Source: Saccostrea cucullata
Lineage: Eukaryota
Length of the DNA stretch: 63,871 nt
Assembly: GCF_032062105.1 (NCBI RefSeq)
Contig: NW_026940671.1
Span: forward strand, 62,001 to 125,871
Direction: 5' to 3'
The notes under the pieces were generated by a model that did no database searches, was not told the origin of the DNA, and saw nothing but the letters and a program-made list of their open reading frames with translations. The number at the start of each line of letters is the position of its first letter. Within the stretch, counting starts at the first letter, position 1. Positions 6,564 through 42,435 of the stretch are shown here, piece by piece. The position numbers and the translations under genes were made by a program.

Positions 6564-8312
6564 ATGGCAGCAGGCAGCATCTCGTATAGTCCCATTTTCC
6601 TTTTGGTTGTAGCAGTAAGTATCTTTTTTTGTATTAATCCCTTTAAAGAGACTGGGTAGTCAAACAAATTACGTCTAAATCCACAAAAGATGGTAAATAT
6701 ACTTTTGTTTTAACCAAACTATTATTTCATAAGAAACAGTCAAACATATGCTAAAGCCAATTATATACAATGTAATTCTTTTTTTTCCAGCAGGTTTTAT
6801 TAAATAGTCTTAAAATGGTCATGAACACCCAGTCTTATAGAAGTTATTACATTGTTCATTTTTTGGAAAAAAGTATTGTTTTCTACCAAATTAATTTTTA
6901 GTATCATCCTACAAGTTCTTCCGAGCCACATTGTTTATTTCATTTTCAGCAACAATTTTATGCTGTCAATGTTTTAATCTTAAAGTACGCCAAATTTTCA
7001 TTTTTTTGAAATAGTTTTTATTTTGTCATAGTTATTATTTTATATATACATGTATAATCATTTTTACAAGAATTTCTGATCTTTGTTCACAACCCTAACT
7101 TGTACTTTTAATATAAGTGTAAACTTCATTAAAAATAGATAACATAGATAACATTTATCATTTAAGTAATAAAGTCTAAATCGTTTATTATTGATGTAAA
7201 ACACTTTTATTGTAAATATATAAGATTATTAGTATGGCATTTATATATATAATCATTTTTACGAGAAAATCTTATATACTTTATATATTGTTATATGTGT
7301 TATATGTAAATAAACTCTCTAAGTGAAATGCTGAAGGACTATTTTCAATTTGAAATTAAAGGCAGTGGTCTTTGGAGGACATCACCATCATCATAGATCC
7401 ACCACTACCCCCAAGCCCACCACCCCAACTACGACACAAAAACCGACCCCCGAGTCCTTCGAATACGGCTACACATTCTACTTTTATGATCCCATTTCTG
7501 TAAGTATAAATTGATAATTTTATTAATTTGGTTGATTCATGGCAACACCTGAACCCATCTCTGATGTTGTGGAGGTTCGTTTTTGCTCTGCTCCCATTTT
7601 GTATTGTTTTATGGACTTTTGAGCTTGAACACTGTTCCTTATATACGTATATATTGCATAACTAAACGTGTTATATACTTTATTTTATTAATTAATAATA
7701 ATACTGAGTATATATAATTATTTTGGAAGGTGTTGTAGTCAAACTGATTTAAAAAAAAACTACACTTTTTATAAAACAATGTAATACTTATATTTTTACA
7801 CCTTTACACGCTAAAAGCATTTTCCATTGTTTTTTAGCATTACATATGCTCTATCCACGTGACGAGATTAACTAGATTATGTATGTGTTACCATGTACCA
7901 TACGATGAACGGGATACTGTGCATGATCAACAAACTGCTATAAACATCGAGGTAAGTAAAGACGTAATACGCAATTATTATCAAATATGATTTCCCAGAG
8001 AATATTCCTACTTTGAACAGCTAAATATTTTGTACAAAAACGTTTGTGAATGTTTAGATTTAGTTTGATAATTTAACCTGTTATTATAACCACAGCAGGT
8101 AACGACCGCCATTGAGATCAAGTATGCTTAAAGAAATATTGTTTATTTTACAGTTTGTATTGATTTCTTAACAGAAAAGGATGTATGCCTTGTATGCTGC
8201 TGGACACCACACCCCAATGAACGATCTTCAGTACTATAGCAAGACCAACTACGACATGTGTATCGACCACGGCAGGCACCTCAACACCACTATAGAGCTT
8301 GTATATCCGTAA
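6564..8312 (+). CDS. Secreted His/Thr-rich 4-Cys (BRICHOS-like) family protein, copy A, 146 aa
   Basis: Exons 6564-6614, 7362-7499, 7838-7951, 8175-8312, all GT-AG phase 0. Signal peptide MAAGSISYSPIFLLVVA/AVVFG, HHHHH, Thr/Pro linker, FYFYDPIS/HYIC...CMCYHVPY...YSKTNYDMC...NTTIELVYP*. AATAAA at ~8345. Confidence 0.85.
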
Positions 8313-10094
8313 TAGGTCATTAAAATATATTTACACTTATAGACAATAAACGTCATTTTGAAGTAGTTTGGTTTTTGTTGAATTTAACAAAAATTCTCTC
8401 ATAAATAGAGAGAGAGGCATATATTTTAGCATATATATTTGAATTTTGGGAGAAAAAAATTGATTGTGTTATTTATCCTTGAATCAGCTAGAGGTTAAAA
8501 TTAGCACCTTACAACACATATAATATAACAATGAGTTCTTATTCATATTTGATTTATTCCTGATAATTTGTTGGATACTTAAGATCGTTTTGAAGAAGAT
8601 GAAATAGCTATTTGTTCGTCGTAGATCTGTGCATATATCTCCAATAACATTCCTGTCATAATTGTATTCTATTTCAATTTTTTTTTATCATTCCATTTTA
8701 AGCATTTGATCAAAAAAAATTATTGTATTGAGAATACATAAATTTTGTATTAGCAAATATATGGTATTGAAACTAAGAAACTCGATCGTTGTATACTTTA
8801 CTTAAGAGTAATATAATTACAAACAGCATACCGTTCTTATATTAAAAGGTAGGTATTTTTTATTCATAAATCATAAATGTTTTGAGATTTTCCAACTAGT
8901 CTCCCTTAAAAACTATATTTGTACAACCTCTTTGTTACCAAAGAAGAAAGAAATCTATTTCGACTTGACAAGTTAAAAAAGATATAAAAATAATCAAAAT
9001 ATCTTAATATATACTGTTATTAGAGACAACATTATGGATTTTGAAACACTTCATATTCATGTCACAGAGTGGAATATGATTCACGTTTTGATAAGATTTG
9101 TACTTATTATTGTACTGTATCAGTGTAATGGAATGCTTAAATAGATAAGACAATAATATATAAATATGTTTCATACAAATTTTTGTTAAAGAATTATGCT
9201 TTAAAGAAAATTCTGTCTAATTTCATTATATAGCTCAAGGATTCCAGTTTTATTCTTTTTGGTGCCATAATGCCCAACTGAGGATTATTTTAACAATATA
9301 AAAATATTTTTAAGTAAGTGCTTTTTAAACAACATTGCCACTTTTCCTGAGTATTAGAATAAAATTAAAATTTTCGAAAGTGTATAGTATCATGACAAAA
9401 TTATATTTTAATATCATTTCAGAAGAAAAAATAATATAAACCTTATTTCAATATATAAGTTATATGAAACAGAAAATTAATTTTTGTATGGGTTTTATTG
9501 ATACATCATTGCACTTTCACAAATTTTAATTTTATTCATAATACTTAGGAAAAGTGGCAATCTTGTTTTCATATAAATCATTTCATAATATAGAATATCA
9601 GCTGAATATAAACAGTATGCTTTTATCATGTGATGTCGCTAAATTAAGCACTGATAAACTCATCTAATCTATCTAGTTGTTTTATTACTCTGACTATTCA
9701 TTACGTCATCCAAAGAACAGGCTTCATTATTTGATGCACTATAACGCAGTTTTATAAGGAAACAGAAAGATATATGGTTTTCGTATTTTTATGAGCACAA
9801 GCTAGATGGTTTTCATTTTGCCCTTCAATCGCTTAATGCGAGATTTTAACATACATCTGATTGTTGGATTAAAGCAGACATCCGATACATTTCATGTCTG
9901 GCCCTTCGCCTGCCATGGTCTTCACACAATTGGTATGAAAAAAAAGTCAGTCATCATTTGACGTAATGACCTTGTCAGCTGATAAATACAATTTATCATT
10001 GAGAAACAAAGCTGTTTAAACGTTTCATCAACTTGATTGTTAATCCATTATTTATACACAGAATTGGCGATGGATTTGTTTCCTTTGTTTCCCG

Positions 10095-42300: not shown

Positions 42301-42435
42301 ATGAATTTAACAGAACTTCAGTTCTACAGCAAACGTAGCTTTTACATGTGTTCACACACTAATGGAAACCCTGGAGTCAACACAACTTACTATTTAGTGT
42401 ACCCCAAACCCAGTCAATACGGCTCTACTGCATAG
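39335..42435 (+). CDS. Secreted His/Thr-rich 4-Cys (BRICHOS-like) family protein, copy F, 158 aa
   Basis: Exons 39335-39382, 41307-41438, 41669-41788, 42259-42435, phase 0. ...FYVYDRDS/HYFCVSHHSSHQHLHYCICYHIPY.../KLIFELF...FYSKRSFYMC...NTTYYLVY. Confidence 0.84.
40118..41200 (+). mobile_element. Helentron-like non-autonomous element with six ~147-bp tandem units
   Basis: 5' TGTCCCCCGCTTTCGCGAAAGCGAGGGGACA hairpin, (GTCT/GTCC/GTCA)n, units near 40231, 40379, 40525, 40670, 40825, 40965, 3' AAAGCGGGGGAC + hairpin + CTTGT. Confidence 0.85.

What the first reader, a model, noticed from the sequence alone, without database searches (positions are those of the whole stretch)
6564..42435. Hidden six-member tandem family of secreted His-rich proteins resembling a stand-alone BRICHOS domain
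Seen: six same-strand genes with identical 4-exon, all-phase-0 structure: signal peptide, Thr/Pro linker, then Y-x-YD-x2-S-H-x2-C...C-x-CYH-x-P-[YF]...E-K...YS-x5-MC...N-x-T. Four Cys and a C-terminal N-glycosylation sequon are invariant in the five intact copies. Known: BRICHOS domains have a conserved Asp in a beta strand, a Cys ~15 aa later and a C-terminal ..I..LC...P.Y. Gastrokines are secreted BRICHOS proteins without a client peptide, whereas annelid arenicin/alvinellacin precursors carry a C-terminal antimicrobial peptide. Inference: a divergent client-less BRICHOS-like family with an extra disulfide, possibly extracellular anti-amyloid chaperones or mucosal defence proteins.
Basis: partly seen in the sequence, partly recalled or inferred. 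Interest (0 to 1): 0.76.

Follow-up and report, generated by a model that had tools for sequence, protein, structure and literature searches.

The report
Oyster-only secreted His-rich BRICHOS-like family
A row of six small oyster genes (one broken) encodes secreted, histidine-rich proteins found only in oysters, whose conserved core may be a very divergent version of the BRICHOS anti-aggregation domain, though this could not be proven here.

Summary
The window (Saccostrea cucullata contig) carries six same-strand, 4-exon, all-phase-0 genes at 6564-42435. Five are intact (146-158 aa) and one is a pseudogene. Each has an N-terminal hydrophobic signal, a Thr/Pro/His linker and a ~95-aa core with invariant YD, H-x2-C-x2-H, C-x-CYH-x-P, YS...C and N-x-T.

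Three corrections apply:
- The array is interrupted at 21-35 kb by a TIR gene and a furin-like Cys-rich gene.
- The genes are not hidden. At least three are RefSeq 'uncharacterized protein' models identical to my exon models.
- A seventh, copy-5-like gene lies on another contig.

The family was found only in Ostreidae (Saccostrea, Crassostrea/Magallana, Ostrea). It has three ancient subfamilies under purifying selection.

The BRICHOS reading is partly supported.
- For: a protein-language-model search of two members put a gastrokine-1/BRICHOS cluster as best named neighbour, followed by OAF and SP-C-like clusters. The Asp/Cys/Cys trio, region lengths and crude strand/helix order also fit published BRICHOS features.
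- Against: Pfam BRICHOS hit 0 of 11 proteins and 0 of 10 exon peptides. PDB profile searches were blank, and the Atlas structure search returned no BRICHOS.

The scan noted other BRICHOS-like oyster clusters elsewhere in this genome.

The parts
6564..6614 (+). copy 1 exon 1 (start codon, signal peptide N-part, 17 codons)
   Evidence: ATG at 6564, GTAAGT donor, phase 0
7362..7499 (+). copy 1 exon 2 (end of signal, His5 run, Thr/Pro linker, Y-x-YD-x2-S)
   Evidence: AG acceptor and GTAAGT donor in phase 0
7838..7951 (+). copy 1 exon 3 (H-x2-C-x2-H ... C-x-CYH-x-P-Y)
8175..8312 (+). copy 1 exon 4 with stop (YS-x5-MC, N-T-T)
10696..10755 (+). copy 2 exon 1
   Evidence: equals the start of public protein P0034
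11029..11154 (+). copy 2 exon 2
11547..11660 (+). copy 2 exon 3
11970..12113 (+). copy 2 exon 4 with stop
16442..16501 (+). copy 3 (pseudogene) exon 1, still open
   Evidence: aligned to copies 2 and 4
16837..16959 (+). copy 3 exon 2 remnant, frame lost by a 1-base deletion and a 1-base insertion
17177..17284 (+). copy 3 exon 3 remnant, ends in a premature stop, donor lost
17340..17465 (+). copy 3 exon 4 remnant (5' part and intron 3 deleted), with stop
19530..19589 (+). copy 4 exon 1
   Evidence: equals the start of P0001 = XP_062594554.1
19923..20048 (+). copy 4 exon 2
20246..20359 (+). copy 4 exon 3
21019..21162 (+). copy 4 exon 4 with stop
35227..35271 (+). copy 5 exon 1 (candidate; the least certain exon)
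   Evidence: only hydrophobic ATG...GTAAGT phase-0 candidate upstream; no public protein seen for this copy
36510..36644 (+). copy 5 exon 2 (acceptor 36510, alternative 36516)
36786..36899 (+). copy 5 exon 3
37173..37352 (+). copy 5 exon 4 with stop (one extra Cys)
39335..39382 (+). copy 6 exon 1
   Evidence: equals the start of P0002 = XP_062594557.1
41307..41438 (+). copy 6 exon 2
41669..41788 (+). copy 6 exon 3 (two extra codons)
42259..42435 (+). copy 6 exon 4 with stop

Best explanation
These genes form an oyster-specific (Ostreidae) family of small secreted glycoproteins. Each has a cleavable signal peptide, a short Thr/Pro/His-rich stalk that is probably O-glycosylated, and one compact ~95-residue domain held by two disulfides.

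I read that domain as a very divergent BRICHOS-type fold: three or four short strands, a helix, a short strand, a short helix disulfide-linked to the Cys-bearing strand, and a last strand. No C-terminal client peptide follows it.

Shown here: the genes, their structure, their conservation under purifying selection, and their restriction to oysters. Inferred: the fold, and the mode of action. I propose that the exposed sheet face binds extended, aggregation-prone segments of other secreted proteins in trans. The three invariant His next to the Cys (H-x2-C-x2-H, CYH) could provide a pH or metal switch.
For: Genes and conservation:
- Exon models. Three equal public RefSeq proteins.
- Copies 2 and 4 give dN/dS 0.16 (dN 0.113, dS 0.708, 127 codons). 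The other 9 pairs keep 38-54% protein identity although synonymous sites are saturated (pS 0.77-0.92).
- Three clades with support 97/95, 98/95 and 100/97 each hold Saccostrea and Ostrea members.
- 20 columns are invariant across 16 proteins.

Secretion: 13 of 13 full-length proteins have one hydrophobic segment (KD11 2.1-3.3) starting within residues 3-19 and none later (max 1.47).

BRICHOS-like features:
- Best named Atlas cluster is GKN1/BRICHOS for both P0001 (0.86, 190 of 256 features) and P0006 (0.87, 194 of 256). OAF and SP-C-like clusters follow. All ten best named hits belong to one family or clan.
- Invariant D59, C77/C79 and C129 lie 18-20 and 50-52 residues apart. The three superfamily-invariant residues of ITM2A (D144, C160, C219) lie 16 and 59 apart (PMC2751770, passages).
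- Hydrophobic segment ~20 aa, linker ~28 aa and domain ~97 aa fall inside that paper's ranges (12-33, 24-105, 83-104).
- A crude propensity profile gives strand-strand-strand, helix, weak helix, final strand, with D59 at a strand end. This matches the description in PMC2751770 and PMC9714404 (passages).
- The Asp-to-Cys distance in the second helix region (D117 to C129, 12 residues) equals that in this genome's canonical BRICHOS exon (read).
Against: - Pfam BRICHOS hit 0 of 10 exon peptides and 0 of 11 full-length proteins at E up to 10. The two exons of this genome's canonical BRICHOS gene, scanned alone, ring it at 1e-7 and 0.0083.
- PDB profile searches gave 0 hits at E up to 10. P0008 alone gave 3 unrelated chains at E 0.98-9.9.
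- hhalign of the family profile against each canonical BRICHOS exon gave probability 0.14% and 0.05%.
- The Atlas's own model of P0006 (pLDDT 0.68, pTM 0.59) has only two mollusc 'hypothetical' clusters at TM 0.5-0.6 as neighbours. No BRICHOS cluster appears in the 10 rows shown.
- Atlas feature scores under 0.9 are leads only, by that tool's own calibration.
- There is no C-terminal client and no conserved furin site, so the usual BRICHOS logic (a chaperone for its own pro-peptide) does not apply.
- There are no expression, splicing or protein data.
Confidence: 0.55

Rival explanations
1. The family is an orphan, oyster-specific secreted domain with a fold of its own. Its invariant His/Cys cluster (H-x2-C-x2-H ... 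C-x-C-Y-H) and N-terminal His runs bind metal (Zn, Cu, Ni), and the proteins act in metal handling, transport or storage. The likeness to BRICHOS is convergent or spurious.
For: - Three His and three Cys are invariant within 19 residues.
- His makes up 5.8-15.1% of the protein, with His4-5 runs at the mature N-terminus in the copy-1 clade.
- One Ostrea edulis member is auto-named 'histidine-rich glycoprotein-like'.
- No profile method finds any known family.
- Structure neighbours are only mollusc hypothetical proteins.
- Bivalve plasma His-rich proteins bind metals (PMC6530089, passages).
Against: - The language-model neighbours are BRICHOS families, not metal-binding ones.
- Cys in secreted proteins are usually disulfide-bonded.
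- His runs are absent from the copy-5/6 clade and from several Crassostrea members.
- The major oyster plasma proteins described (dominin 19.4 kDa, segon 30.5 kDa) are different proteins by size (PMC6530089, passages).
Confidence: 0.25
2. The proteins are precursors of host-defence peptides. Either the His/Thr/Pro-rich N-terminal stretch or the last strand is released as an antimicrobial peptide, as in annelid BRICHOS-AMP precursors.
For: - Immune-type genes lie nearby: a TIR gene, a C-type lectin exon and an astacin exon.
- The family has expanded by tandem duplication.
- BRICHOS-AMP precursors exist in polychaetes (PMC9756803, passages).
Against: - No Cys-rich hairpin follows the domain. The proteins end 1-11 residues after the invariant Tyr of the last conserved strand.
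- No conserved dibasic or furin site was seen. Gly-Lys-Arg-Pro is limited to the copy-2/4 clade.
- Selection is purifying rather than diversifying for the one pair that can be measured.
- The review states that BRICHOS-AMPs are known only from polychaetes (PMC9756803).
Confidence: 0.07
3. The genes are prediction artefacts or dead repeats that make no protein.
For: No RNA run was listed. One copy is clearly dead. Exon-3-less models exist in other oysters.
Against: - Open frames, canonical splice sites and 20 invariant residues are kept across at least five species in three genera.
- dN/dS is 0.16.
- The Logan entries P0016, P0022 and P0023 come from assemblies of public sequencing runs, whose type I did not see.
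Confidence: 0.03

Closest known systems
Gastrokines (GKN1/GKN2; BRICHOS superfamily)
   Same: Both are secreted through a signal peptide rather than a membrane anchor, with a linker followed by one ~95-aa domain. A GKN1/BRICHOS cluster is the best named language-model neighbour of two family members.
   Different: The oyster proteins do not match Pfam BRICHOS. They lack the 29-149-aa C-terminal region that BRICHOS proteins other than proSP-C carry (PMC2751770). They have two extra invariant Cys, three invariant His, a Thr/Pro/His stalk, and are limited to oysters.
proSP-C BRICHOS domain
   Same: Neither has a region C-terminal to the domain. Both have the Asp at a strand end, one Cys in the following strand region and one Cys in the short second helix (PMC9714404, PMC2751770 passages).
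   Different: proSP-C carries its client, the SP-C transmembrane helix, N-terminally and is a type II membrane protein. Here the N-terminal part is a signal peptide plus a polar linker that does not look like a client.
Annelid BRICHOS-AMP precursors (arenicin, alvinellacin, capitellacin, nicomicin)
   Same: Both are lophotrochozoan proteins with a hydrophobic N-terminus, possibly followed by a BRICHOS-type domain.
   Different: The annelid precursors end in a Cys-rich beta-hairpin peptide (PMC9756803). The oyster proteins have no such tail.
Canonical ITM2-like BRICHOS gene of the same genome (G000:C12909, L010)
   Same: The second helix region shows the same Asp-to-Cys spacing. A phase-0 intron lies 21-24 residues after the strand Cys in both genes. 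This is weak evidence.
   Different: The L010 exons match Pfam BRICHOS on their own. The family profile does not align to them significantly, and the intron nearest the Asp lies elsewhere.
Bivalve plasma histidine-rich glycoproteins and oyster segon
   Same: All are secreted, His-rich and glycosylated. One family member is auto-named 'histidine-rich glycoprotein-like'.
   Different: The sizes differ: mussel HRG is 63 kDa and segon 30.5 kDa (PMC6530089 passages), against about 14 kDa here. No sequence comparison was possible because those sequences were not at hand.

Membership tests
BRICHOS (Pfam PF04089) | Match to the family profile at or above the curated cut-off (25 bits) | tested here: not met
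   0 of 10 exon peptides, 0 of 8 proteins and 0 of 11 proteins match at E up to 10. The own-genome scan rings only the unrelated locus L010. As a positive control, the L010 exons score 32.5 and 16.8 bits on their own.
BRICHOS superfamily | The three superfamily-invariant residues: one Asp, then a Cys about 16 residues later, then a Cys about 59 further on (PMC2751770) | tested here: met
   D59, C77/C79 and C129 are invariant in 16 of 16 proteins, with spacings of 18-20 and 50-52. The residues were placed by eye, not by a significant alignment.
BRICHOS superfamily | Fold: four antiparallel strands plus a fifth parallel strand, two helices, and the short helix disulfide-linked to strand 4 (PMC9714404) | tested here: inconclusive
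A crude propensity profile gives a compatible order of elements. The Atlas structure search of P0006 (pLDDT 0.68) lists no BRICHOS cluster.
BRICHOS superfamily | Region plan: hydrophobic segment (12-33 aa), linker (24-105 aa), BRICHOS domain (83-104 aa) (PMC2751770) | tested here: met
   The regions measure about 20, 28 and 97 aa in P0001.
BRICHOS superfamily | A C-terminal mature or client polypeptide after a convertase site (absent only in proSP-C) | tested here: not met
   The proteins end 1-11 residues after the invariant Tyr of the last conserved strand, and there is no conserved R-x-x-R site.
BRICHOS superfamily | Remote-homology support (profile-profile or embedding similarity to known members) | tested here: inconclusive
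   Atlas features score 0.86-0.87 to GKN1/BRICHOS with 190-194 of 256 features shared, plus OAF and SP-C-like clusters. hhalign against single canonical exons is negative. No BRICHOS alignment could be obtained for a proper profile-profile test.
BRICHOS-AMP precursors | A Cys-rich beta-hairpin peptide at the C-terminus | tested here: not met
   No residues remain for one.
Histidine-rich glycoproteins of bivalve plasma | Sequence kinship to mussel HRG/HIP | not tested
   No HRG sequence was at hand. Only composition and an automatic name point that way.

The most novel reading that the evidence does not exclude
Oysters have turned a BRICHOS domain into a free-standing secreted module without its own client. 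It has gained a second disulfide and an invariant His triad that makes binding pH- or metal-switched. The module would then work as an extracellular holdase or metal-dependent carrier for other secreted proteins, such as shell-matrix, mucus or adhesive proteins, in animals that I recall accumulate very high Zn and Cu. This would be the first trans-acting invertebrate BRICHOS family.
Probability: 0.12. Interest if true: 0.75.

Novelty: new variant of a known kind. Interest (0 to 1): 0.45.

Why it matters
If the fold is confirmed, this family extends BRICHOS to a minimal form of about 95 residues with no client, and it has many natural variants across oysters. That would be useful for asking what a BRICHOS domain does without its own pro-peptide, and which residues set client choice and pH or metal dependence.

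For oyster biology, it gives a first hypothesis for proteins listed as 'uncharacterized' in every sequenced ostreid. I found no paper on them. Two searches with 12 locus or accession names returned nothing. Searches for BRICHOS with bivalve, mollusc or oyster returned only reviews of annelid peptides and vertebrate work.

If the fold is not BRICHOS, the finding is an ordinary lineage-specific secreted family.

Tried and rejected
- RNA evidence: the look-up of sequencing runs on 6450-12250 listed no run, so read laying could not be used and splicing rests on homology and public models.
- Word search with exon 4 of copy 2: no candidate. Its length rule could not have shown full-length kin anyway.
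- Pfam scans per exon and per protein gave only sub-threshold chance hits: Defensin-like 0.052, YCF90 0.031, Rotavirus_VP7 0.042, DUF4771 0.034, Cadherin_C_2 0.081. I rejected all of them.
- Representative search with the exon-4 profile: 13 hits at E up to 0.001. I kept 10 as family members and rejected 3 (P0011-P0013) as internally repetitive proteins matching 17-31 profile positions several times over.
- Mis-modelled rows: P0009 and P0023 have mis-modelled 3' ends. Both were dropped from A6 and A7, and P0009 was kept only in the tree. P0037, P0010, P0017, P0038, P0021 and P0022 (partial or mis-modelled) and the exon-3-less P0003, P0004 and P0026 were left out of A6, A7 and the tree.
- PDB sequence searches were blank or unrelated.
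- hhalign against the two canonical BRICHOS exons of this genome was not significant.
- Three weak own-genome hits (C5520, C14010, C7082; E 4.8-9.3) were followed up. Each is one isolated exon-like stretch with no companion exon in the 10 kb fetched, so I rejected them as family members.
- Segon and dominin as identity were rejected on size (PMC6530089, passages only).
- I could not obtain any stored BRICHOS protein alignment, so a true profile-profile test was not run.
- Supplementary files were not asked for. Oyster proteome or expression tables in supplements could name these loci.
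Full report
What is there. The window is part of a 125,871-base contig of the oyster Saccostrea cucullata. It corresponds to G000:C22808:62001-125871, and species names come from the public records of two encoded proteins.

- C-x-CYH-x-P-[YF]: 6 times.
- YS-x5-MC: 6 times.
- Y-x-YD-x2-S: 5 times, plus one unrelated astacin site at 3616.

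Extending each hit to the nearest in-frame AG and GT gave six genes of four exons each. In the five intact genes every exon length is a multiple of three. All 15 donors begin GT and all 15 acceptors end AG. The products would be 146, 147, 147, 157 and 158 residues.

Copy 3 (16442-17465) is a pseudogene. It has two frame-breaking single-base indels in exon 2 and a stop in exon 3, and it has lost intron 3 together with the start of exon 4.

A profile of the six exon-4 peptides was searched against 1.84 billion representative proteins instead. This returned public full-length proteins. Three of them (P0001, P0034, P0002) read exon after exon exactly like my models of copies 4, 2 and 6. They are RefSeq 'uncharacterized protein' LOC134255971, LOC134255972 and LOC134255974. 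So the genes are real annotated models, not hidden ones. I saw no public protein for copies 1 and 5, and copy 5's first exon is the least certain part.

Layout. Copies 1-4 lie at 6.5-21.2 kb and copies 5-6 at 35.2-42.4 kb. Between the two groups sit a TIR-domain ORF on the minus strand (TIR_2, 3.6e-16) and a 1077-residue single-ORF protein with furin-like Cys-rich repeats (1.2e-28). The array is therefore interrupted.

A profile of 11 full-length proteins searched against the whole 1.17-Gb assembly gave 23 matches at E up to 10:
- 17 are exons in this window.
- 3 are the exons of one further gene on contig C551.
- 3 are weak, isolated stretches.

The C551 gene resembles copy 5, with 83.6% DNA identity over 1984 bases including introns. 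It is either a paralogue or a divergent haplotype. Each of the three weak stretches turned out to be a single exon-like piece without companions.

Family and history. Every named relative comes from Ostreidae: Saccostrea cucullata and S. echinata, Crassostrea virginica, C. gigas and C. angulata, and Ostrea edulis. One search examined 1149 candidates and listed 19 proteins, of which 14 carry oyster names and 5 carry no name. All are called 'uncharacterized', except one 'histidine-rich glycoprotein-like'.

A maximum-likelihood tree of 17 proteins shows three clades: copy-1-like, copy-2/3/4-like and copy-5/6-like. Support is 97/95, 98/95 and 100/97. Each clade has both Saccostrea and Ostrea members, so the three subfamilies predate the split of these genera.

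Copies 2 and 4 differ with dN/dS 0.16. The other nine pairs are saturated at synonymous sites yet keep 38-54% protein identity. Twenty alignment columns are invariant in 16 proteins, including Y58, D59, H63, C66, H69, C77, C79, Y80, H81, P83, G110, Y121, S122, C129, T139 and Y144 in P0001 numbering. These are working genes under purifying selection.

Protein features. All 13 full-length proteins examined have one N-terminal hydrophobic segment and no other, which fits a signal peptide. No signal-peptide predictor was available. The next ~28 residues are rich in Thr, Pro and His. His makes up 5.8-15.1% of the whole protein. The N-x-T sequon near the C-terminus is invariant in the six window copies. 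Across the 16 proteins, two depart at the Asn.

Is the core a BRICHOS domain? Passages of PMC2751770 and PMC9714404 give the family's definition:
- A hydrophobic segment, a linker, a domain of 83-104 residues and usually a C-terminal region.
- Only one Asp and two Cys conserved throughout the superfamily.
- A sheet of four antiparallel strands plus a fifth strand.
- A short second helix disulfide-linked to strand 4.
- The Asp at the end of strand 2.

Evidence for BRICHOS:
- The oyster family has invariant Asp, Cys and Cys in that order, at spacings of 18-20 and 50-52 residues against 16 and 59 in ITM2A.
- Region lengths fall inside the published ranges.
- A crude propensity profile shows three short strands, a helix, a weaker helix and a final strand, with the Asp at a strand end.
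- A protein-language-model search of two members (P0001 and P0006, 45% identical) gave the same picture each time. After three unnamed mollusc clusters, the best named cluster was GKN1/BRICHOS (0.86 and 0.87; 190 and 194 of 256 features shared). OAF and SP-C-like clusters followed. By the tool's own calibration, sharing 170 or more features is typical of true family members.

Evidence against BRICHOS:
- Pfam BRICHOS matched none of 10 exon peptides or 11 proteins.
- By contrast, the two exons of this genome's canonical ITM2-like BRICHOS gene (L010) match it on their own at 1e-7 and 0.0083.
- PDB profile searches were blank.
- hhalign of the family profile against those two exons was not significant. 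The best 4-column piece did fall in the register I expected.
- The Atlas's own model of P0006 (pLDDT 0.68) has no BRICHOS cluster among the neighbours shown. Even its likely own cluster reaches only TM 0.50, so this negative is weak.

The decisive test was a predicted structure compared with solved BRICHOS structures. I put the BRICHOS reading at about 0.55-0.6.

How it may work. The family has no C-terminal tail and no conserved convertase site, so it cannot be a precursor of the annelid BRICHOS-AMP kind (PMC9756803, passages). If it is BRICHOS-like, it must act on other proteins in trans. The two extra Cys (C66 and one of C77/C79) would form a second, cross-strand disulfide. The three invariant His beside them suggest a pH or metal switch. 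All of this is inference.

The main rival is a new metal-binding His/Cys domain unrelated to BRICHOS. It is not segon or dominin, which differ in size (PMC6530089, passages).

What is known. I found no paper naming any of 12 locus or accession names of the family. I also found no description of an oyster BRICHOS family. Supplements were not open and may list these loci in expression or proteome tables.

Earlier notes of this scan report other divergent BRICHOS-like gene clusters on other pieces of the same genome. My genome-wide profile search shows that they are not members of this family at detectable similarity. I did not test those notes.

Verdict. The family is best described as a probable new, minimal, client-less variant of a known kind, of moderate interest.

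Noticed in passing
public proteins P0003 (O. edulis isoform X2), P0004 (C. gigas), P0026 (C. angulata): Public models of the copy-5/6 subfamily skip exon 3 in frame, which is possible because all introns are phase 0. Skipping removes three of the four invariant Cys. I did not test whether these are real isoforms or modelling artefacts.
   Followed up: no
window 16442-17465 and protein P0035: Copy 3 is broken in this genome, but the Saccostrea echinata protein P0035 is open. P0035 groups with copies 2 and 4 in the tree and ends with the same residues as copy 3's last exon. The loss therefore looks recent.
   Followed up: partly
G000:C551:3054-3857 (loci L004, L018, L025, L029): A seventh gene resembles copy 5, with 83.6% DNA identity over 1984 bases including introns. 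It is either a recent paralogue or a divergent haplotype contig.
   Followed up: partly
window 26443-27189 (-) and 28372-31605 (+): A TIR-domain ORF and a 1077-aa single-ORF furin-like Cys-rich protein with a C-terminal hydrophobic stretch sit head to head between copies 4 and 5. Other readers of this scan also noted them.
   Followed up: partly
window 3526-3720 (+), 4528-5025 (+), 42647-42847 (-): An astacin protease exon (1.9e-12) and a kringle ORF (8e-22) lie upstream of copy 1. A C-type lectin exon (0.0011, below cut-off) lies just after copy 6.
   Followed up: no
L010 = G000:C12909:154508-157648: This is a canonical ITM2-like BRICHOS gene of the same genome. Its two BRICHOS exons lie at L010 1525-1641 (-) and 1071-1223 (-), and the first is flanked by phase-0 introns.
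   Followed up: partly
window 54544-56355 (-): A 603-aa ORF has no Pfam match at E up to 0.01. Another reader flagged part of it as PD-(D/E)XK-like.
   Followed up: no
window 38400-38600: A poly-Pro/poly-Gly low-complexity stretch lies on both strands inside the long first intron of copy 6.
   Followed up: no
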